Shown here: piece by piece, positions 1 through 12,000 of the stretch
Layout of the letters: each line of letters opens with the position of its first letter
Position numbering within the stretch: position 1 is the first letter of the stretch
Source: Pocillopora damicornis
Lineage: Eukaryota
DNA: 64,000 nucleotides
NCBI RefSeq assembly: GCF_003704095.1
Contig: NW_020844827.1
Coordinates: forward strand, 124,001-188,000
Direction of reading: 5' to 3'
Notes under the pieces: model-generated
What the model was told of the DNA's origin: nothing
Database searches by the model: none
Seen by the model: only the letters and a program-made list of their open reading frames with translations
Position numbers and translations under genes: made by a program

Positions 1-3000
1 GGATCAGCTGTCTCCGATAACGGAGACGACAGAGCCGTGTCCGTCTATCGCGTCAAATCCAAACTCGGCGTCAAATTCCACCGCCCCAAGCAGCCCGTGC
101 TCACCTTTAGACGTTGCGCCGTTCATGCCAGCATTTTTTACAACTTCCCCTGCGAACACATTGGACAGGAAGATGCAACGATTCAGTCTTAAAGACAGAG
201 ACAACACTTTAGTCGCAGATGACGATGAAGACGATGACTTTTCTGGTAATCCTGAACCTAGTGCTACGCCCAGGTTTAACGAAATGCCGGCAAACAAAAA
301 CCGGGAATTTTCATCCAGGAGTAAGTCCTTCGAACAGCTCGCGCGTGGTAGCTACACAGTTGGTCACATTCCTGTGGAAACGGCCAAAGCAGCTGGTATC
401 CCTGTCATTAACGCAAGCATTGAGGAAACTCGTCCCAGGGTGAATTCAAATTCAGAACTATACGGCGTTTTAACAAGTAGAAAACTCAACCAGACAGGTA
501 CTAATGCGAGCCAGAATTTGTCTGCATTTCGACCGTACGTGTTGTCCGCGCGTGAAGACGAAGTGGGAGAGATATTCGCAACCGAAGGCGTAGACGGGAG
601 GCGGGACTCACTCGAGACTTCGCCTGTGCATTCACCTGTACCCGCTTTAACTCGCGGGAAACGGGATGACACTCGACAAGAGGCTGCTCTCCGATCTCGT
701 GATCTACATGCACTGGACAGCCCAGGAGATGTGGTAATTTACGAACGTTCTTTGTCGAGCTCGCATGGGACTCAGGAAAACGTTCCAACTGAAAACTCCA
801 AAGAACAAGGTAACCAAAACGAATGTGCGCAAACACATTCTGCATCTGTCAACCGATCAAAGAAAGCGGAAGCGTTTGTGTTTGATTTTGATCAAGGTGT
901 TGTGCAAAGTTATGAAATTAATCCTGCTACGCAAGACTATAGAACTTATAATAATGGCAAACGTGGAAGTGTTGGTGATGGCAGCAATTCAATACAGGGT
1001 AACCAGGTTCTGAAAAAGTCACAAGAAGATCGTTTTGCCACATTCAGTAGAAACTCTCCTAGAGGTGCACAATTACACAGGCCTCAGGAACAGGAATTAG
1101 CCTCTAGTCGTGAAACAAATGGCGGCCAAGTTTTCAAAGAAAGGACAAGTGTTGATATGAAAGATCTTCGAACGTCTGACGGATTTTCAACGTATAGGAA
1201 AAATTATTCGCCAGAAAAGAAAGCAAATGATGCAAATGGAGTCTCTGGAACAGGTATAGAGAGCTGGGATGTGCGGCGGTCAGACGGGTTTTCAACTTTC
1301 AGAAAGGAACCTATGGCTGCTTCAGCAGATAGTACGTTGGCGCAGAATAATATGGCCTCTTTCCAAGGTCAGAGAGGAAACGGAATTGATCCATTTTCAA
1401 CATTCGCCATATCTACCAAGAGACAGGAAAGTAACCAGGGTCGTGATCAAGTCGAATTACACCACTCTCCTGAACAAGAATCAACGACAGCTGTCGTTAG
1501 AGGATCCGTTCCGAGCAGGGGAGGAGAGAGTGAGACTGACGCCATCCTCAGAGAGGGAGAAGAGGAGCCGGTTCGCTCACCTGGTGCGTCAAACATTTTG
1601 CGGTCTCGGACCTTCAGGAAAACGCCCACCGGTCAAATCGTTGAGGATGTTAGTATTGGTACCAGGAATTCTCTAGTGCATAACGAACTACGTTCTTCAA
1701 CAAACAGCGACCGCAAAGACACTGGACAGCACACTGTAAATAAACACATCCGGGATAGCCCAGAGGGAACCGGAAGTGATAATCCACACCGGATCAGTTG
1801 GACGGATGATCAGGAAGCTGGGGCGAGGCTGATCAAACAGTTGAATGCCAGTAAAGAAATGGCGGTAAGGAAAAAGTAATTTGTAGAAAAATTTAGAAAG
1901 ACAGAAACAACGTAAACAGCACAGGTGATTCCAAATAAGTAAATATTTGTCTTTTTTTCCACAGGCCACCCCGAAAAGTCATGACAGTGATAGTTCCAGA
2001 AGGCGTGGCAGCCCCAGACATACAGGCCGTGGAAGCCCGGGAGCGAGAATCAGTTGGCTGACTGCCGCCCGGAGTGGTGTAGGAGGGCAGGTCATGTTGA
2101 ATGACAAAGGTAAGGGAGGGGATGGTACAGGGAATTGTCATCTANNNNNNNNNNNNNNNNNNNNNNNNNNNNNNNNNNNNNNNNNNNNNNNNNNNNNNNN
2201 NNNNNNCATCTCCCTCCTCCCTTCCGCGAGCTCTTGTAAAGGAAGTGACGGCAAGTTCTCGCTGACAATAAACTGACAACTCTTTATAACCATTACAAGC
2301 TCACAGGCGATAGAAATATGATGCTCTTTAGTAAGCAGATTTTTCGCTGTGGTTTTGACCTTTGCTCGCCCACACCTGAAACCTAATTTAGCCTGTGGAG
2401 GAAAATGCCTTGCTTTCACATCCGGTGATTTTTTTTCTATATTTAGTTTGATTGGAAGTTTTAAAAAGGCATTTGGGAAATTTTTAGACACCATGCAATT
2501 AAACCCTTATCAGCATTGACAGATCTTAGGGTAATAGCACGCAGAAAAGATATTTATGAATTCTGTTTTGCGGCAAACATTTTGCGTCGAGAAACGGATG
2601 TTTGGCTCGGGCCGCTAGGAAATGACTGCAAAATCAAGGTCAGGTAAAATACGGCAATCCGGCTGGGATTTTGTGCAGTTTTGACCCTTTTCCGCCGGTG
2701 TTGATATCCATCGAGGTGTGGCAGACAAATTAATTTTCCTTGGCAAGAAATCCTGGACGTAATCAACTCGAACCCACCGATCGCTTTATATACCAGGTTG
2801 TGGCATTTTCTGCTAACTCGACCGTTCTTCTGTGTTCTACTAATCTTTTTTGGATGTTAATGGTATCTTTCTCAGTTTACCGTCAATATTTTGTTGGCGA
2901 ACAGTGATTTTTTTTTCCGCGCGTTACTGTCCTTTCGTGCTCGTGTGTGACTGTGTTTACGCGCGAAGTTTACGACATCGATCAGACACGCCTGAGTAAT

Positions 3001-6000
3001 GCTAAAAGCATTACACTGGCTTTTTCATCTGTATGACAAAGACGCTCTGAAGCCGACTCTTTTGGATTTGAAGAAATTTCTCCTGCCGCTGTGAATTTAA
3101 GGTGAGTGTTCCGACAGTCTTTTAACCATACTGATAAATAATATATGCGAGGTAATAAAATTGTTGATACTTGGCGATTCTCGCCCTTAGTGCTGTAATT
3201 TGCATGTAAGAACTGAATATATTAACTTGTAAGTCGTGGCGTGGTGTATTTATTTCTGAGTGTTTTAATCGGATCTTGTGTTGTTTTTCGCCGTCCGTGA
3301 CTGAATAATCTCTCAAATTTGCCAAGGTTCGCCTGGAGTGTGACGACTGAACCGAAGGAAATACAGAAATCGGGAAATTGTAAACAGACGTACGGATCGT
3401 GGTTTTGTTTTTTTACATAAGCGCTGTAATGTTGCTTCGCTCATACTGTTGGATGTTGTGTAGGAAATGTCGCTCATAAATTCAACGGCGGTGATGTCAT
3501 CTGCTAGAAAGAGAGGACTTAGCGTGTGATTCGATCGTCATCTTTCAGAAATAGTTTCCAGTCGTTTATAGTGAATTCGTCATTTAACACGGCTGTTGTG
3601 TTGTGAACATCACTCGTTCATCAGACAGACACGCGCAGTTTTTTCTTCCTAGAGTACTTCTTGGCGAGGCTCTGACCGCGTTTGATTTGCGTTATCTCGT
3701 CAATCGCTGTGATCTAACTTTAGAGGGAACACCACCGAGAAGTTCACGTATTAATAAGCGAGCAAGCGGGGAAGATCGAAGAAGTTATTTCACAGGACCT
3801 GTCGAATACCACCGGAAACCAACGTGTTTATAATCTGGTGCTGTTTGTTCCTTTGAGTGTACCACACTGAGCGGTTCTAATGCTCGGTGAAGAAGTATTC
3901 AAGGTAGATTTCTTGTTTATTGATATCTTTGTACAGGAGCCTTGTGTTTTTTTGTATCCCGGCTTTTAACCTTCACATTCGCTAAAACGTTTCGTCTTTC
4001 AATCTCGGGTTAAATACATGCTGTAGCAGGTTAGCAGTTAATATTAAACTGGATTCAATACGGAACTTTTTAGCTGCGGTGTTTTGTATTTTTTTCTTCA
4101 TTGCATCAACATTCTTTGTCAGCACAGAATCGAGATGTGTACTTTTATCGTAACGAGGCTCTTAGTTTTTAGAAAGCTTTTTCTGACTTTATTAATTGTT
4201 TCTAATTGTTTTATATCCGAAATGTCACGTAATTTTTTGGTGAAATCGAACTCAACCGTGCTTGGCAAAATATTATCAATTCATTGAAAGCACTCATGCA
4301 ATATTTATAATATTTCTGTTATAGAGTTATATTCGCCCATACTCTATATCTAAGGGAGAGAGATGTTTGTTTTTGTTTAATTCTGCCTTTTATCCTCTAT
4401 TTACTGAGCCAAGTTTGATGAATGTATTATGAGAGACAAAATTATCTTCATCTAGTTTACATTTTGTACATTTTTCGCTCGTCAAGGGTTATTCGGCGCC
4501 CTTTTGTAAATATGAAAGTAATAAGTACCATGCATGTATATTGGAGTTAGATGCTCACTTTTATATTGCTTTCCAATTTATCGATTTCGTTTAGAATAGA
4601 TTTTGTATCTTGTCCTCATGATGGATATTTTTGGCTTAAAGCTAATCCGTTTTGTGAGAAAGAGAAGAACTATTTGCGGTCCAAAAGCGTTGTGCAATGA
4701 TTATTTTGAAGATAATTACTAACATGTTTACCTAATTAAGGGAAAACGCTGAAAGTTTGTTTCATTTATCAACTTTTTTGTTTTTTTCGGAAAATGAACT
4801 GAATTTCTCGAGCAGAATTTTTCGAAATAACCTCTTCACTTCGGTTCTTTAGGTGAAAACGAAAAAACGTTTCTGCAAATATTTACTAGATGATACACAT
4901 AATGTTTTCTTTTTCTATTGATTACAAATAGCAACCCAAGTTATTTTCACCGTAGTTTCCCGCAAGTTACATTAATTTACAAAAGAAAAATTATTAGAGT
5001 TTTATTTGTATCGAACGTTAAAATGGGCAGCAAAATCACGATAATATTGAAATTTTTAGTCTACCTTTATACCTAGCGGCTAAGAACTTGAAAATCTCTT
5101 TTCCAGTATAGCGTTATGTACATCAGTTCTTACATGCAAAGGCCGACCCTAATGCTTCAAACAATTTCTGTCGAAATTTGACCTTCCATAATATATTTCT
5201 TTTTTTTCTTATTTATTTTCGAATGATAAAGTTTTTTAATTTTCGTCGTCTCTTCAGATTGCATGCAGAAAGAAGCTTCAACAGAACTTGCTGCTGGCGA
5301 AATATCTCATGGGCGATCGTGTTTCGTAGCAACAGTGGTTATCCGCCCTAAACATATGCGCAATACTGAGGGAGCTCCATGGGATTTGCAAGAAAATGGA
5401 GCCAAAGAGGAACCCGAGGGCTTGAGGCTGAGAGCAAGTGCTCGTTTTGGTCCCGAAGATGACACACCTGTAGTTGAATCAGGATCGTTATTAAGGAATA
5501 CTGGTACAACGACTAGTTTAGATGGTGAATGTAGTTCTTCTACTGAGATATTTGAAAAAGAAAGAAATATGTTACACAGCGAGTCTAGTCTCGAGCCACA
5601 GACAGGTGGGAGTATTCGTGACAGAATAGCGGCGCTTAAAGCTGCCTCGGGAATGAAAACACTGTGTGTTACTCCAGGCAAAGAGCAGGTGAAGAAGCCT
5701 TTTACCAAACCTGCCGTTAGAGCGCGCGAAGACGAAGAAAATGAAAAAGTGAAAACAGACCTAGGAGGTGAATCTCCAAAATCGAACGAAGAATCGTCGA
5801 AGACAGAACGTGAATCTGAGATGTCCCAGATCTCTCCAAAAAATAGCATCGCGTTCGATGTGGGATTCCAAAATGCGACAAAAAGTCGCCCGCCCCCTCG
5901 TGTGTTGTCGAGATTTAAAACTGATAATTTCGAATCGAAAAACGAGGAAATTGTTTTAGAATCACCGGTTGCGGGTAATAAAGAAATTGGGGCCGTTACG

Positions 6001-9000
6001 GACAAAGCTTTAGCCTTTGAAGTCAGCTTTAACGATGAACCGCGTTCAAAACGCGCTAAGGATGAACCTTTTCTGATGCAATCACCATTCAAGGCCCTGA
6101 GAACGCGTTCTAACCTCAGGCGTCAACAGAACTCGAAGCCGTGCAAGCCAATCAGGGCGCTAGAGGATTCGGAAGATAACAATAGCTCTGAATTACCGAA
6201 GCTGCTTAAACGAAACACATTCACTCTAGATTCAGTCTCAGATCAGGGAACACCGATCGTTAAGGTTTTAGACGAACTTGCGAGTAAGGAAGAAGCCAGA
6301 CAAAAAGGAGAGGGGGAGTCAGGCGAGCGTGGCACAAAACGCAGTACCTTCACTCTAGAGTCTGTATCCTTATCTAAAGTTAATGTCACTGAGAGTGGGC
6401 TGCCTGTGGTCAATGTACTCAACGACTCTTTGATTAAGAAGGAATCTGAACTAAGTCAAGTGGAATTAGACATTGCTACGACATCTTTGTCAAACGAAAT
6501 TTCTAAAAAAAGAAGCACTTTCACTCTGGAAACTGTAGCGAAAGAATTAGATTGTGCGACAGAACAAGAAGAGAGACGGGTAACCCAATATGAAGAATAT
6601 CATCCAGGCCCCATTACTACCGATACGCTCGCAAAGCAGACTTTGACGTCAGAAGAGGAACTTGTGACCTCCGAGAAACGTTCAACATACAGTTTAGACG
6701 CAGTTTCATCGTCGTTACAAAGGGTAACTGACCAAGGTGTACTTGTCATTGAAGTTTTAAATCAGCTCGCTAAACGCGAAGAATTGCAATCGCCTGTCGG
6801 GAGTGATGCTGACAGTTCACCAGCTTTGGCCGATTCCGTTCAAAAACGTGGTACGTTCACTCTTGACACTGTGTCACAGACCATAGACGACGAGGAGAAG
6901 AAGGGCGTGTCTACAGTGAAAGTGTTAGATCAGCTTGCGTCTAAACACGAGTCCACTTCATCGACTGAGGCAAACTCGGAAGAAAAAATCAATACTGTGA
7001 CTCACCAAAATCGTGGCACCTTCACCTTGGACAGCGTGTCGCAGACTCTCGAAGATGCCGAGCGTAATGGTCTACCGGCAGTTGAGGCGTTAGATCGGCT
7101 TGCTTCTGATCAGGAGACTCATCTGATCCTTGACGCTTCATGTGAAGACAAAGTGAAAACTGAACCACCCCAAAACCGAGGCACTTACTCATTAGACTCA
7201 GTATCTCACGCGATCGAGGAGGCCGTAGAGAAAGGAATTCCAGTTTCCGTCACGTTGAATAACTTAACCCAGGAGGGGAAGACCCCTGCGCGTGCTCTTG
7301 GTGACGTTTCTGCTGGCGACAATTTTTGCCGTCTCAGTGCACACCCCGATGTGGAAGCACAGCCACATGACGATCGGGACGAGATCGAAGCCTGTTTCGA
7401 AGATGCTTTGGAACAACTGGAGGATTGCTTGACTTTTGTGACCTTCCCATCGACTTCTGATCGTAGAAGATCGTATTCTGACAGGAGGCGATCGTTTACT
7501 GACCGGAATGAATCGTCTAATGATGGGGGACAGTTGTCATCTGATCAAGAACGTTCTTCCGAGACACCTGGAAAGCGTGGCACGTACGATCTCGACGATG
7601 TATCCAATTCTGTCGAAGTTGGTACCAAAGTGGGGATCCCTGTTGTTGAAACGCTGGAACACTTGTCAAAAACAAAGAGCCGTCAAGGGCAATCTTTTCA
7701 AGAAACTCGCCAGTTTGAGCAAAACAGAAGAACTTATACGCTGGATGAAGTTTCCTTTTCACTTCAGAATGCCTCTGAGAATGGTATCCCTGTGGTTGAA
7801 GCTCTCCAAAACGTAACTAAAAGTACCAAGCTAGTTCAAGAGACTGGGGATAGGGCACAGAAGCGAGGCACATACACCCTTGATGATGTATCGAAGTCGC
7901 TGGAGCGCGCTAAGAGCACCGGGATGCCTGTTATTGAAGCGCTAGAGTCTTTGTCAAAAGAAAAGTCATCGAGTCCACTAAGACTTAAGATCCCAGAGAG
8001 AGGCGGTGAAAACAGAGGGACTTACACTTTGGATGAAGTGAGTCATTCACTGGAAAAGGCAAAACAGAGAGGTCTCCCTGTTGTGGACGCTTTAGGGCAG
8101 CTTACACATGCTAAAGATGGCGTCTCTCTCCGAGGAACGCCTGATGCCGTCCATCGAAGGCAAGAAAAACTAGTTAACAGAAAAACCTACGCGCTGGCCA
8201 GTCCGCTTGAGACAATTGGTGAAGGAACTAAGTTACGCTTGTATGATGGCAGCCAGCGGCAGATGTTATCGCCACTGACTTTACATATGAAAACAAACGA
8301 AGCCACCCCTGAGAAAGTAAACAGCAGCGACAGTAAAGCAAAGGGCTTAGGTGTTGTGCAGAAGTTAGATTTCTTGACTTCAGCTTGCGAGCTTTTGCTG
8401 GAGGCGAATGCCAAAGAAATGGCTCGAGATCGTGGGCAAACAAGTTTGGAGAGTTCTTGGGAAACCCCAACTATTGACGAATCCTCTCGAACCTTGCCGA
8501 AGACTCCTAATGAAGGTAAAGAATCTGATCGCCGTACGTATTCGTTAGACATCGTCTCGCGGACTGTTGACGACGCCACAGCGGCAGGGATCCCAGTTGT
8601 AGAAGCTCTAAAAAGTGTGAAACCTGTGGCCAAAGCAAATACAACTTACAGAACTAATCTAATGCGACTGAATTCCAAATCCGACTCGGAACTCATTCAC
8701 GATGAGACCGAGAAAAAGTCGTCGGAGAGGAACACTCATTCCCTTGGGGACGTGTCAAAGACGCTTTCAGACAAGACGAAAGCTGGGATTCCTGTCATAC
8801 AAGCCCTGGATCAACTTGCCAAGGATTTGGTGGAGTTTTCAAGAACTGCGCTGGGCGAAGATGTGAAGGTTTCCTCTCTTGGGAAAGAAAACCGAAAGAG
8901 AAAACGCCATTCGGAAGTTATTGATCGCGGTAATAAAACAGCTGGTCAGCAGTCATCACACCCTTCCACTCAAGGACCACCTAACTCCTCACCCATGCGA

Positions 9001-12000
9001 AAAGCTCATTCGTTAAATGATATAGCTTCTGCTGTGCAACTGGCATTTCAAACTGGTACTTCTTTAGCGGACCTTTTAGACAGTATTGCATCTGAAAAAC
9101 CTGTCGAACAGCTTTCATCTTCGAGTGACGTCCGACCGCGATCGGTCGATTCCGGATTTATCTCGTCACTTTCCGACTACGATATTTCGTCACAAAGTGT
9201 GGATTCGCCGCGCAACCGAAGCAACACGCTCATTCTTGATAGCTCGAACGAAGAACTAGATTTGGCAAAACTCGTGGGTTCTGCACCAAGCGATAAAATT
9301 GTTCTCACCGAAGACACGACGATCAACGAAAACCGTCGAACGTTCACACTTGATCACGTGAGCGGCTCGGTAGAACGTGAAATTTCACGGGGTGTACCTA
9401 TAATCGAGGCTTTGAAAAAAGTCTCCAACAACTGTGAGATGAAAATGCAAATAAGTGAAAAGATCGAAAGTATAGACAACACTGAGAATAAATCGAGAGA
9501 AATTTCAGAAGAAACGGTGATTAACAACTCTGTGAAAAAGAAGTCGCCTCCGAAGCCTAAACGACAAATATCAAAGAAAACTGCGTCACTGCGAACTAAT
9601 TCTGACGCGTTTGTGGTTGAGTTTTACTCCTCTAGCGGTCAGCAGGGTCAAAATACGTCCAAATTTCAGATTGTGGACAATGAAGTTGAAGAAGTGAATG
9701 CCAGTAATGATGAATCTAACGTGAAAAACTCTGACGGGAAAGCGCAAGGGATTGAAGATAAATCTAGCGTTACTTCGTCGTCGTCAGATAAGGTCCCTGC
9801 AAAGGGGCTTAAACCTGTATCTACAAGCACACCCTCACGAGAACGTGCCACTTGGCGCGCAAGTGGAAGCGTTCTGGACAAGATTGAGAGTCTAATGGAT
9901 GCTGAAGGGGATTGTGGGATGTCACCTGCGGATGTTCTTGATCAAGTAACTGACTTACCTGATGATTTTCAAGGTTTGTTTGAAATGGAAAGTAGAACCT
10001 GATACTTCCATTAGTGATCAGGTTCAAACCTTTGATAACTCATTAAAGGTTAAACCAAAGGCTTTGTTTTTTAATGACTACAGCAAATTGTTGTTAGCGA
10101 AAGGAGTCTCTTGTAGTCATGATTTTGCAGACTCAGGGCTGTTTGCAAATGTAATGGTAAAAAGTCATGTTATTTTCTTCTTGTTTTCTGTTCAGAACCA
10201 GCCAGTAAGAGTCGCGTAACTTAACAGTTTAATATAACGTTTTGACTTTTTGGCGTGAAAATGATGCTCGAGTTACATGAAGAAGTCTCTCAGCCGTGTG
10301 GCGCTCCTTAGAACATTCACCAGGGTCACTCTTCGTCACGGGAGGCGCTGGCCTGATGTCTAGCGTGCTGAACTCCAGACGAAGAGGTCTGGGTTCAATA
10401 CATGGCTAGGTCATTGTGTTGTGTTCTTGGGCAAGATGCTTTACTGTTATAGTAAATCTTTCCCCCCCCCCCAGGAGGAAATTTAATGAAATCCTGGGGG
10501 TGGGGATGGGGATTTCCTGCAATAGATGATTGAGTTAGTCTCCTCGTCACCTCTTTAAGGAGTGCTAAGCACTCAAAGATGATTTTAATCAATGTTTTGC
10601 TCTTAGGTGAGATTGAAGAGCCGGAGCAGGACGAAGCCGAAAATGAACAAGCTGTTACATCACAGATCGCCTATCTGCGCATGCAATTGGAGGAAAAACG
10701 GCGTCACATCGAGGCAGAGAAACATCGAGCCCAGGCCGAGTGGGAAGACCAGCGACGGAGACTGGGACAGACTGCCTTTTGGTATGTTATTGGAAAGGCA
10801 CAAGGAGGTCCGGGCGTCGGAGAAGGGACTGAGGTGAGTGAGTAATTTGGAAATCATCGTGTTCTGCGCAGCCGACATTTGGTAAAGTTTTACAACCGTT
10901 AATTTGGTTAGATTTGATTGTTTGAATAGTAATGAAGAATACAAGCGCACAAACCGAGCTTACGCTCCTTGAGATTCCTAGATCAGGAGAATTCTCTTCA
11001 TCGTAAATGCTTTTTAAACTCTTAGGTAAAGCGTCCGGAGATGGTTCCGGTCACGACGCCTCATTCCCACGAAACACCGAGAAAGTCTGTGCCCGAGTTT
11101 CCCAATCAACCCTCGCCTCCCGTCGCTTGGTCGTCCCCAGCAAACTCTCCATTGCCTGCTACTGCACTGGAGTCCAGTCCTCCAAACAATGCAGGGCTTG
11201 AGACTCGTGAATTTCGTCTGTCTGATTATCCACCTGTTGATAATCAGGGAACAGCGCGTCCGTCATCCCAGCCAGCGGTGGAAGTCGGTTCCAGGCCCAC
11301 GCCGGGACCAACACGTCCAGCTTCACACGAATCAGCGGCTTCCCGCCCCAGTCCTACGCGAAAGTGCTGGGATGTGAACGTTGGGCCAGTACTTACACCG
11401 CCCCCATTGGTGCATCCTGACGCAGAATCCGAGAGTAATGACGCTAAAGAAGAATCGAACAACTTTGGAGGTACAGGAGAGATTGAGGTTGAGATTCACA
11501 CCCCGCAGAAGAAAGGAATGGCGATGTTTATCAGCGATGATGACAATCTTGCGCCTCAGGTAAAGTATTTGGGACAGAAAGGTTAGCTTAGGCGGGAAAT
11601 TGCAGAAGAACCAATCCTCTCATGAAAACTTGACCTTTTCAATCTGTATATCTTTGTTTTCTTCATCAATACAGGGATTGACTCCAGAACAACAACGGAA
11701 GCGAGAGAGGTTCATGAAGGCTCGGCAAAAGAAGCAAGCAGAGGAGAAATCACGAAAGGAGGCAGAATTAGAGAAAAAGAGGCGGTAAATGGAGTTACAT
11801 AATTTTTAAAGACCAAGAAAATAATCAGAAATGAATTTTAACTCAATTTTTATGATTTCCACGCTGAATTTTAAATGTCAACCTCTCTCTTAGTCTATGT
11901 GGCTTTCAAACAAGTATGACTCAAAAAAAAGGGCAAATAGCTAATAGCAAATGGAGCAACATTCAACTGTGTGCCAAAAGGATTCCGGGATTGCTCTGGT

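What the first reader, a model, noticed from the sequence alone, without database searches (positions are those of the whole stretch)
5258..9973. Giant symmetric cassette exon that would roughly double a CAMSAP/Patronin protein
Seen: a single 4,716-nt stop-free exon (1,572 codons) sits between the 1965-2109 exon and the CAMSAP coiled-coil exon. Both splice boundaries are phase 1, so inclusion or skipping keeps the frame. Established: CAMSAPs cap microtubule minus ends, and giant-exon isoforms are known for ankyrins, where they organise neuronal microtubule domains. Inference: this could be a giant CAMSAP isoform in an early-branching animal. I do not know of one being described.
Basis: partly seen in the sequence, partly recalled or inferred. 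Interest (0 to 1): 0.8.

Follow-up and report, generated by a model that had tools for sequence, protein, structure and literature searches.

The report
CAMSAP isoform from an internal promoter
The 4.7-kb open exon inside this coral CAMSAP (microtubule minus-end protein) gene is real and expressed, but RNA shows it is the first coding exon of a transcript from an internal promoter, which swaps the normal N-terminal half for about 1,570 residues of a new repeat instead of doubling the protein.

Summary
An open frame runs 5230-10002. It has a used acceptor at 5258 and a conserved donor at 9973. It lies between CAMSAP exon 1965-2109 and the CC1 exon at 10607, and all four boundaries are phase 1.

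The cassette reading does not hold. In polyA RNA contigs of four runs from three studies:
- Exon 1965-2109 runs straight into the CC1 exon, so the giant exon is skipped.
- The giant exon is joined upstream to its own exon, about 3261-3903, which lies in the intron.
- That leader is full of stops, so translation starts at ATG 5263.
- No 2109>5258 joint was seen.

RefSeq models in Oculina, Montipora and Nematostella start in the same region and continue into CC1 and CKK without a CH domain.

The product is therefore a protein of roughly 2,100 aa: an acidic, mostly disordered N-terminal region carrying about 14 copies of an unrecognised ~35-residue unit (R-x-T-Y-x-L-D-x-V-S...G-I-P-V-V-E-A-L, a predicted helical hairpin), followed by the shared CC1-CKK minus-end module. 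It is under purifying selection (dN/dS 0.26) and looks confined to anthozoans, although the search returns no taxon labels. I found no paper describing it. Its function is inferred only: a minus-end-anchored multivalent scaffold.

The parts
1..1864 (+). 3' part of the large central exon of canonical CAMSAP. The exon begins about 390 nt upstream of the window; the CH-domain exons lie 4.6-9.8 kb upstream.
   Evidence: tblastn with the Oculina model P0048. RNA contigs cover 1500-1863 and are joined 1864>1965. CH domain at C1462:118279-119425.
335..460 (+). One weak, repeat-like motif (ARGSYTVGHIP-VETAKAAGIPVINA) in the canonical central exon. It may be the ancestor of the repeat.
   Evidence: Regex scan, alignment A2, BLASTP E 0.005 against the giant exon. 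Also present in the Oculina canonical part. A weak lead only.
1965..2109 (+). Last canonical exon before the giant exon. It is spliced directly to the CC1 exon, so the giant exon is skipped.
   Evidence: In all four runs the contig over 1964-2111 goes on with GAGATTGAAGAGCCGGA..., which is the sequence at 10609 onward (table 7).
2568..3101 (+). Minor alternative leader exon. Its donor AAG|GTGAGT at 3101/3102 is joined to 5258.
   Evidence: Joint 3099>5256 (cut +2) in run X2 only, depth 8. The donor is conserved in L010.
3102..3260 (+). Best-conserved block of the intron, with a TATA-like TATATTAA at 3218-3225. Candidate core promoter of the giant-exon transcript.
   Evidence: 87% identity to L010 here, against 53-73% in the rest of the intron. 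RNA contigs of the leader start at 3261-3280 in three runs, one of them preceded by Illumina adapter letters. The transcription start is not mapped.
3261..3903 (+). Non-coding leader exon of the giant-exon transcript (5' end approximate). Donor CAAG|GTAGAT.
   Evidence: Joint 3901>5256 (cut +2, GT..AG) in all four runs; single contigs span 3278-3901 and 5256-7499. There are nine stops in the giant exon's frame, the last four codons before the joint. The donor is conserved in L010.
5258..9973 (+). Giant exon. It is the first coding exon of the internal-promoter isoform, with start codon ATG 5263 and 1,570 codons.
   Evidence: The same MQK/MQR start occurs in Oculina RefSeq P0007 and in the L010 orthologue. 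dN/dS 0.26.
6208..9450 (+). Array of about 14 units of ~35 residues, [KN]-R-x-T-[YF]-x-L-D-x-V-S-x-x-L-x-x-A-x-x-x-G-[ILV]-P-V-[VI]-E-A-L-x-x-L, spaced 43-200 residues apart.
   Evidence: The profile finds 13 units in the giant exon plus the canonical-exon motif (a training row), and none elsewhere in the 234-Mb genome at E<=0.01. AF2 gives helix-turn-helix with pLDDT 77-88 and disordered linkers.
8146..8418 (+). Most conserved non-repeat block (AVHRRQEKLVNRKTYALASPLETIGEG...LDFLTSACELLL). Many positions are invariant from corals to sea anemones.
   Evidence: Alignment A3 of 40 sequences. Alignment to Nematostella. AF2 gives one confident helix and low confidence elsewhere.
10607..10830 (+). 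CC1 exon (the spectrin and Ca2+/calmodulin-binding region in vertebrate CAMSAP1), shared by both transcripts.
   Evidence: PF17095, 61.5 bits. The junction with 2109 is read directly. The junction with 9973 rests on contig lengths and on the RefSeq orthologues.
11035..14059 (+). Shared downstream exons, including the coiled-coil region and the CKK domain (12501-12623, 12999-13103, 13473-13541, 13904-14059).
   Evidence: PF08683 hits. tblastn with the Oculina model.

Best explanation
The gene makes two kinds of mRNA. The canonical one runs from the CH-domain exons through the central exon and exon 1965-2109, then splices straight to the CC1 exon at 10607. The second starts at a promoter inside that 8.5-kb intron. 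It has a non-coding leader exon of roughly 640 nt (3261-3903, with a minor variant ending at 3101), which is spliced to the giant exon at 5258. Translation starts at ATG 5263, and donor 9973 joins the shared CC1 and CKK exons in frame. The product is about 2,100 aa. It keeps the minus-end-recognising CKK domain and the CC1 region, and lacks the CH domain and the whole canonical N-terminal half. In their place it carries an acidic (pI 5.2), Ser/Glu/Thr/Lys-rich, mostly disordered region of 1,570 residues, with about 14 small helical-hairpin units and a few strongly conserved short blocks. Shown: the exon, its expression, its own leader, the skip in the canonical mRNA, purifying selection, and conservation of this build across anthozoans. 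Strongly indicated but not read directly: the 9973>10607 junction in this species. Inferred only: the function. I take the protein to be a minus-end-anchored multivalent scaffold, in which CKK places it at microtubule minus ends and the repeated units recruit many copies of an unknown partner, rather than a lattice binder in its own right.
For: RNA (polyA runs X1, X2, X5, X12 from three studies). Joint 3903>5258 is present in all four runs, with single contigs spanning both sides. The canonical contig continues from 2109 into the sequence of 10609 onward in all four runs. The intron 3904-5100 is nearly uncovered, so the libraries hold spliced RNA. The leader carries stops in frame.

Downstream junction. 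The giant-exon contigs of X5 and X12 both run 2,501 nt past 7499, which is 2,474 nt to 9973 plus 27 nt. The canonical contigs of X1, X5 and X12 also end exactly 27 nt into the CC1 exon. This is what a k=31 graph gives if two paths merge there and differ at the fourth base before the joint (AAAG versus CAAG).

Orthologues. RefSeq XP_078381859 (Oculina, 2,158 aa), XP_068735780 (Montipora, 2,138 aa) and XP_048590714-16 (Nematostella, 2,855-2,867 aa) begin in the giant region and carry CC1 and CKK but no CH. In GCA_004324835.1 the homologous exon is annotated as its own gene nested inside a 1,587-aa canonical CAMSAP gene.

Conservation. The acceptor, both leader donors and a promoter-like block are conserved in L010. 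dN/dS is 0.26 overall and 0.12 in residues 801-1000.

Repeat. It is unique to this locus in the genome and forms predicted helical hairpins. CC1 binds spectrin and calmodulin in vertebrate CAMSAP1 (PMC4016758).
Against: All RNA evidence is from assembled contigs. They cannot show transcript ends or rare forms, so the start site near 3261 is approximate and a minor 2109>5258 form could be missed. Ab initio GenBank models chain the CH exons to the giant exon (Desmophyllum OS493_014485, 3,080 aa; Oculina KAL9963081, 6,580 aa). ORFs of the central exon and of the giant exon also fall in one 90% cluster, which suggests that a chained model exists for this genus too. Nothing tested here bears on function: Pfam, PDB sequence, Foldseek and the ESM Atlas all gave nothing.
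Confidence: 0.78

Rival explanations
1. The first reader's model holds for a minority or a special cell type. The exon is also used as an in-frame cassette between 2109 and 10607, giving a CAMSAP of about 3,560 aa with CH, repeats and CKK.
For: All four boundaries are phase 1 and there is no stop between 5258 and ATG 5263. Ab initio models chain the exons in this way. Contigs drop rare variants (tool note).
Against: No 2109>5258 joint was found in four runs from three studies. The canonical contig passes 2109 without a branch in all four, and the giant-exon contig passes 5258 into the leader without a branch in X1 and X5. No RefSeq model found in either word search (covering 868-3,776 aa) carries CH together with the giant region. 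A phase match at 5258 is expected by chance one time in three.
Confidence: 0.13
2. It is an independent nested gene. The transcript ends at or just after the giant exon and is not joined to CC1 and CKK, so the protein has nothing to do with microtubule minus ends.
For: In GCA_004324835.1 the homologous region is annotated as a separate two-exon gene of 1,179 aa without CC1 or CKK, inside the canonical gene. The 9973>10607 junction was not read directly here.
Against: The frame is closed by a stop only nine codons past a conserved GT donor, which is phase-matched to the CC1 exon. Two giant-exon contigs end exactly 27 nt beyond 9973, as expected for a merge into the CC1 exon, and the canonical contigs end at the same node. 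RefSeq models in three genera join it to CC1 and CKK.
Confidence: 0.07
3. It is not a functional coding exon: a chance open frame, a decaying duplicate or intronic transcription.
For: No known domain. Largely low-complexity composition.
Against: 1,570 codons are open. dN/dS is 0.26. Repeats and blocks are conserved out to sea anemones and more distant anthozoan relatives. It is spliced and present in polyA RNA at a depth similar to the canonical exons.
Confidence: 0.02

Closest known systems
Canonical CAMSAP/Patronin/PTRN-1 proteins (CH, CC1, coiled coils, CKK)
   Same: Same gene. The CC1 exon and the CKK domain are shared, so minus-end recognition and the CC1 region are expected to be kept.
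   Different: No CH domain and none of the canonical first ~1,470 residues. The N-terminus is a 1,570-residue repeat region with no counterpart outside anthozoans in a 1.84-billion-protein search.
RefSeq models XP_048590714-16 (Nematostella LOC5518363), XP_078381859-61 (Oculina LOC144664608), XP_068735780 (Montipora, 'fap1 adhesin-like')
   Same: Orthologous build: giant repeat region, then CC1, then CKK, each with its own start codon.
   Different: These are automatic predictions named 'uncharacterized' or misnamed. They are filed as separate genes, not as products of the CAMSAP gene. I found no paper about them.
Giant-exon ankyrin isoforms (480-kDa ankyrin-G, 440-kDa ankyrin-B); from established knowledge
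   Same: One very large exon encodes a long, mostly unstructured region in a cytoskeletal organiser.
   Different: The ankyrin giant exons are internal cassettes inserted between retained domains. Here the exon replaces the N-terminal half through its own promoter.
Internal-promoter isoforms of large cytoskeletal genes (dystrophin Dp260/Dp140/Dp116/Dp71; spectraplakin and nesprin isoforms); from established knowledge, see also PMC11230431
   Same: A unique first exon within an intron is spliced to shared downstream exons. The product lacks the N-terminal CH domain(s) and keeps the C-terminal functional module.
   Different: In those cases the unique first exon adds a few residues. Here it is followed by a 4.7-kb coding exon that adds a whole new 1,570-residue module.
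CAMSAP3/marshalin splice isoforms (PMC3828766)
   Same: CAMSAP genes are known to vary their central region by alternative splicing.
   Different: All eight marshalin isoforms keep both CH and CKK. None uses an internal promoter or a repeat module.

Membership tests
CAMSAP/Patronin family (as a product of the gene) | C-terminal CKK domain | tested here: met
   PF08683 matches exon by exon at 12501-13987, best 51 bits. Orthologous RefSeq proteins holding the giant region score 164 bits. The link of the giant exon to these exons in this species is indirect.
CAMSAP/Patronin family (as a product of the gene) | CC1 conserved region with LEEKR | tested here: met
   PF17095, 61.5 bits at 10627-10791. 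MQLEEKRR can be read.
CAMSAP/Patronin family (as a product of the gene) | N-terminal CAMSAP-type CH domain in the same protein | tested here: not met
   The gene has one, but RNA contigs join the giant exon to a non-coding leader, not to the CH-side exons. Orthologous RefSeq proteins have no CH.
Cassette (skipped or included) exon | Inclusion junction from the upstream constitutive exon (2109>5258) | tested here: not met
   Absent in four polyA RNA runs. Only 3903>5258 (four runs) and 3101>5258 (one run) were seen. Rare forms cannot be excluded.
Cassette (skipped or included) exon | Skipping junction (2109>10607) and frame-neutral length | tested here: met
   The skip is read in all four runs. 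The exon is 4,716 nt, which is 3 x 1,572.
Alternative-promoter (internal first exon) isoform | Own 5' exon, absent from the canonical mRNA, spliced to downstream exons | tested here: met
   Leader 3261-3903 is joined to 5258 in four runs. Canonical contigs skip it.
Alternative-promoter (internal first exon) isoform | Mapped transcription start and promoter | tested here: inconclusive
   Leader contigs start at 3261-3280 in three runs and at 3188 in X2, one of them preceded by adapter letters. A conserved block with a TATA-like box lies just upstream. Contigs cannot show a start.
Alternative-promoter (internal first exon) isoform | Shares the 3' exons of the host gene | tested here: inconclusive
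   Indirect only: the 27-nt overhang of the contigs, the conserved phase-matched donor and the RefSeq orthologues.
Pfam T2SSF (PF00482) | Score over the gathering cut-off | tested here: not met
   24.7 bits against a cut-off of 25.2, with no single stretch passing. I take it as chance likeness of the G-I-P...E-A-L hairpins.

The most novel reading that the evidence does not exclude
Anthozoans have a second, CH-less CAMSAP protein made from an internal promoter. Its ~35-residue R-x-T-Y-x-L...G-I-P hairpin is a new protein-binding repeat, so the protein would tether 10-15 copies of some partner to microtubule minus ends, perhaps in one specialised cell type. The repeat may have grown from a single motif already present in the canonical central exon.
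Probability: 0.3. Interest if true: 0.6.

Novelty: new variant of a known kind. Interest (0 to 1): 0.45.

Why it matters
CAMSAP/Patronin proteins are the main organisers of non-centrosomal microtubule arrays. They are usually treated as a single build of CH, coiled coils and CKK. This locus shows that corals and sea anemones, and probably anthozoans generally, make a second product of similar size from the same gene. It keeps the minus-end-binding end and exchanges the other half for a conserved repeat module found nowhere else. That gives a defined, testable object: a Nematostella gene model that can be tagged or deleted. It bears on how minus-end proteins are coupled to different partners in early-branching animals. 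It also corrects annotations that file the product as an unrelated 'uncharacterized' or 'adhesin-like' gene, or that chain all exons into one over-long model.

Tried and rejected
- Family and fold searches gave nothing usable. Pfam on the exon and on single repeats found only sub-threshold T2SSF and scattered chance hits. A PDB sequence search with the repeat profile had a designed helical repeat protein as its best hit at E 0.0035, with no natural relative. Foldseek on a four-repeat model found nothing at E<=0.001. The ESM Atlas gave scores of 0.77-0.79, below any useful level.
- A second AF2 model, of the most conserved non-repeat block, had low confidence (mean pLDDT 55), so I did not search with it.
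- Considered and set aside: the R-x-T-Y-T-L start of each unit as a dynein light chain LC8 'TQT'-type site. The third position is not conserved in the distant members, which mostly read T-Y-D-L, and the Q is missing.
- Considered and set aside: the array as a basic tau-like lattice binder. The region is acidic, pI 5.2.
- A possible internal donor at 9434 as the reason two contigs end at 9425: the numbers do not fit a k=31 branch there, so a polymorphism is more likely.
- PF27295, precomputed on a few homologues, is not in the local Pfam copy.
- Literature searches for a CH-less or giant CAMSAP isoform, for CAMSAP in cnidarians and for LOC5518363 found nothing relevant.
Exons were searched separately by reference.
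Full report
**1. The observation**

The window holds a 1,579-codon ORF at 5263-10002 on the + strand, by far its longest. The frame opens at 5230, after two stops. A pyrimidine tract and CAG end at 5257, so the exon starts at 5258, five bases before ATG 5263. The frame meets CAAG|GTTTGT at 9973/9974 and closes nine codons later.

Pfam profiles searched over the whole assembly place the exon inside one CAMSAP gene:
- The CH domain is 4.6-5.7 kb upstream of the window.
- CC1 is at 10627-10791.
- CKK is at 12501-13987.

tblastn with a coral model gives the exon chain. The central exon runs to 1864, followed by 1965-2109, 5258-9973, 10607-10830 and the further exons. Reading the sequence confirms that 2109, 5258, 9973 and 10607 are all phase 1.

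The assembly size (234.35 Mb in 4,393 contigs) matches the published Pocillopora damicornis assembly size of 234 Mb (PMC6208414). That is a likely identification, not a proven one.

**2. How the exon is used**

PolyA RNA runs hold up to 98% of the exon's sampled words. I laid contigs of four RNA runs from three studies on 1500-7499. I chose that stretch because it tests the upstream junction on which the cassette idea depends.

(a) In all four runs one contig covers 1500-1864 and 1965-2111 and then continues with GAGATTGAAGAGCCGGA.... This is the sequence from 10609 onward, since 2110-2111 (GT) are the same letters as 10607-10608. The canonical mRNA therefore skips the giant exon.

(b) In all four runs position 5258 is joined to 3903 (GT..AG). 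In X1 and X5 single contigs span both sides. Run X2 also has a minor joint from 3101.

(c) No contig joins 2109 to 5258. The canonical contig passes 2109 without a break in all four runs. In X1 and X5 the giant-exon contig passes 5258 without a break.

(d) The intron 3904-5100 has almost no cover. The libraries therefore hold spliced RNA, not DNA.

The leader exon (about 3261-3903), read in the giant exon's frame, has nine stops. The last is four codons before the joint. Translation must therefore start at ATG 5263.

**3. The downstream junction**

This junction lay outside the stretch I laid, so the evidence is indirect, but it is specific.
- The giant-exon contigs of X5 and X12 both extend 2,501 nt past 7499. 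That equals 2,474 nt to 9973 plus 27 nt.
- The canonical contigs of X1, X5 and X12 stop exactly 27 nt into the CC1 exon.
- The two upstream exons end AAAG and CAAG. In a graph of 31-mers, two paths that merge here stay distinct for exactly 27 nt of the shared exon. This explains both numbers.
- The donor and its phase are conserved in the orthologue.
- RefSeq proteins of Oculina and Montipora read ...D-x-E-G-E-I-E-E... across the same joint.

**4. Other species**

The word search found 32 relatives. The exhaustive search of 1.84 billion representatives found only 26.

Three named RefSeq sets begin in the giant region with their own start codon and continue into CC1 and CKK without a CH domain:
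- Oculina XP_078381859-61 (2,154-2,158 aa), which starts MQKD... as this exon does.
- Montipora XP_068735780 (2,138 aa, named 'fap1 adhesin-like').
- Nematostella XP_048590714-16 (2,855-2,867 aa).

A second word search tuned to lengths of 1,187-3,776 aa found no RefSeq model with CH plus the giant region. It found only submitter ab initio models: Desmophyllum at 3,080 aa, and an Oculina model of 6,580 aa that chains two tandem copies.

More distant members were also found. P0069 lies in GCA_004324835.1, which I recall as the octocoral Dendronephthya gigantea; I did not check this. There it is annotated as a separate two-exon gene nested inside a canonical 1,587-aa CAMSAP gene with CH, CC1 and CKK. 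P0066 lies on a Tara metagenome scaffold with a CC1 exon 4.8 kb downstream. The arrangement therefore looks ancestral to Anthozoa.

**5. Promoter region**

In the closest orthologous locus (L010) the whole intron can be aligned. Its best-conserved part is 3102-3260, at 87% identity against 53-73% elsewhere. This lies just upstream of where the leader contigs start, and it includes a TATA-like TATATTAA at 3218-3225. Both leader donors and the acceptor are conserved. One X12 contig starts at 3261 directly after Illumina adapter letters, which hints at a fragment end there. Contigs cannot map a start, so this remains a candidate promoter.

**6. What the exon encodes**

dN/dS against L010 is 0.26 overall, 0.20 in the repeat units and 0.12 in residues 801-1000. 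The region is acidic (pI 5.2) and rich in Ser, Glu, Leu, Thr and Lys.

It holds about 14 units with the pattern [KN]-R-x-T-[YF]-x-L-D-x-V-S-x-x-L-x-x-A-x-x-x-G-[ILV]-P-V-[VI]-E-A-L-x-x-L. A profile of the unit finds 13 copies in this exon and none elsewhere in the genome at E<=0.01. The one further hit is the related motif in the canonical central exon at 335-460, which was in the training set.

AF2 on four units, using 31 homologues, gives each unit as a helix of about 14 residues, a G-I-P turn and a helix of 11-15 residues (pLDDT 77-88). The linkers are disordered and there is no packing between units (pTM 0.21).

In the distant members the unit reads K-R-x-T-Y-x-L-x-x-V-S-x-x-L-D. The invariant core is therefore R-x-T-Y-x-L..V-S..L.

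The best-conserved non-repeat block, AVHRRQEKLVNRKTYALASPLETIGEG...LDFLTSACELLL, has many positions invariant across 40 sequences including sea anemones. It is not predicted to fold with confidence, apart from one helix. It looks like a set of short binding motifs.

No family, solved structure or Atlas cluster matches.

**7. Mechanism**

Shown: there are two mRNAs from one gene, and the giant exon belongs to the one with its own leader.

Strongly indicated: that mRNA shares CC1 through CKK.

From established knowledge: CKK recognises microtubule minus ends, and CC1 of CAMSAP1 binds spectrin and Ca2+/calmodulin (PMC4016758).

Inferred: the protein sits at minus ends through CKK and presents a long flexible acidic arm with 14 or more similar hairpin units and a few conserved motifs. 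That would make it a multivalent adaptor, not a lattice-binding MAP. Which partner it binds is unknown.

Contig depths of the giant exon and of the canonical exons are similar in all four runs. Such depths are a poor measure of expression, so I say only that the form is not rare in whole-colony RNA.

**8. Comparison and novelty**

It works like the internal-promoter isoforms of dystrophin, spectraplakins or nesprins, which are CH-less products sharing the C-terminal module. The difference is that the unique part here is a 4.7-kb coding exon.

It is unlike the ankyrin giant exons, which are true internal cassettes.

The protein models already exist in RefSeq as uncharacterised or misnamed genes. 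Six searches of the held literature found no description.

I class it as a new variant of a known kind, of moderate interest.

**9. Limits**

- All RNA evidence is from assembled contigs of bulk colonies.
- A rare or cell-type-specific 2109>5258 form is not excluded. I put it at about 0.13.
- ORFs of the central exon, the giant exon and downstream exons fall in one 90% cluster. This suggests that some database model for this genus chains them, as in Oculina. That would be a prediction, not evidence of a cassette.

Noticed in passing
window 335-460 (+): The canonical central exon carries one motif (ARGSYTVGHIP-VETAKAAGIPVINA) that resembles the giant exon's repeat unit. It is also present in the Oculina canonical part. 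It may be the seed of the repeat, or a shared binding site.
   Followed up: partly
window 3102-3260 (+): The best-conserved block of the 3.1-kb intron (87% identity to the orthologue, against 53-73% around it). It has a TATA-like box at 3218-3225, just upstream of where the leader contigs begin.
   Followed up: partly
window 5598 (+): In-frame 6-nt insertion (GACGCT) in the RNA contigs of runs X5 and X12. It may correspond to the 1,581-aa variant P0040, a strain or sister-species allele. These runs also differ from the window at about 1-2% of sites.
   Followed up: no
window 9425-9426 (+): The giant-exon contigs of X1 and X2 (same study) both stop at 9425. This is probably a heterozygous site. 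A donor-like ACT|GTGAGA at 9434 is phase 1, but the contig lengths do not fit a branch there.
   Followed up: partly
G000:C1689:251240-251389 (-): A second CAMSAP-type CH match elsewhere in the genome (45 bits), with one TAA inside the match. It could be another CH-bearing gene or a broken copy.
   Followed up: no
P0048 (Oculina KAL9963081.1, 6,580 aa): This submitter model chains two nearly identical copies of the central-exon-to-CKK part of the locus (one CH region only). That points to a tandem duplication or an uncollapsed haplotype in that assembly. It also reads through the GTAAG donor after the exon homologous to 1965-2109.
   Followed up: no
P0028 (Montipora XP_068735780): The RefSeq name 'fap1 adhesin-like' is misleading. 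The protein carries CAMSAP CC1 and CKK domains and is the orthologue of this isoform.
   Followed up: partly
window 5307-6092 (-) and 8187-8633 (-): ORFs of 261 and 148 aa lie antisense to the giant exon. I judge them by-products of the long open frame opposite. No evidence of use was sought.
   Followed up: no
window 2263-3260 (+): Low but consistent RNA cover (depth 2-8) upstream of the main leader, where the intron after 3903 has almost none. X2 has a spliced form from 3101. This could be a dispersed or second start site, or retained canonical intron.
   Followed up: partly
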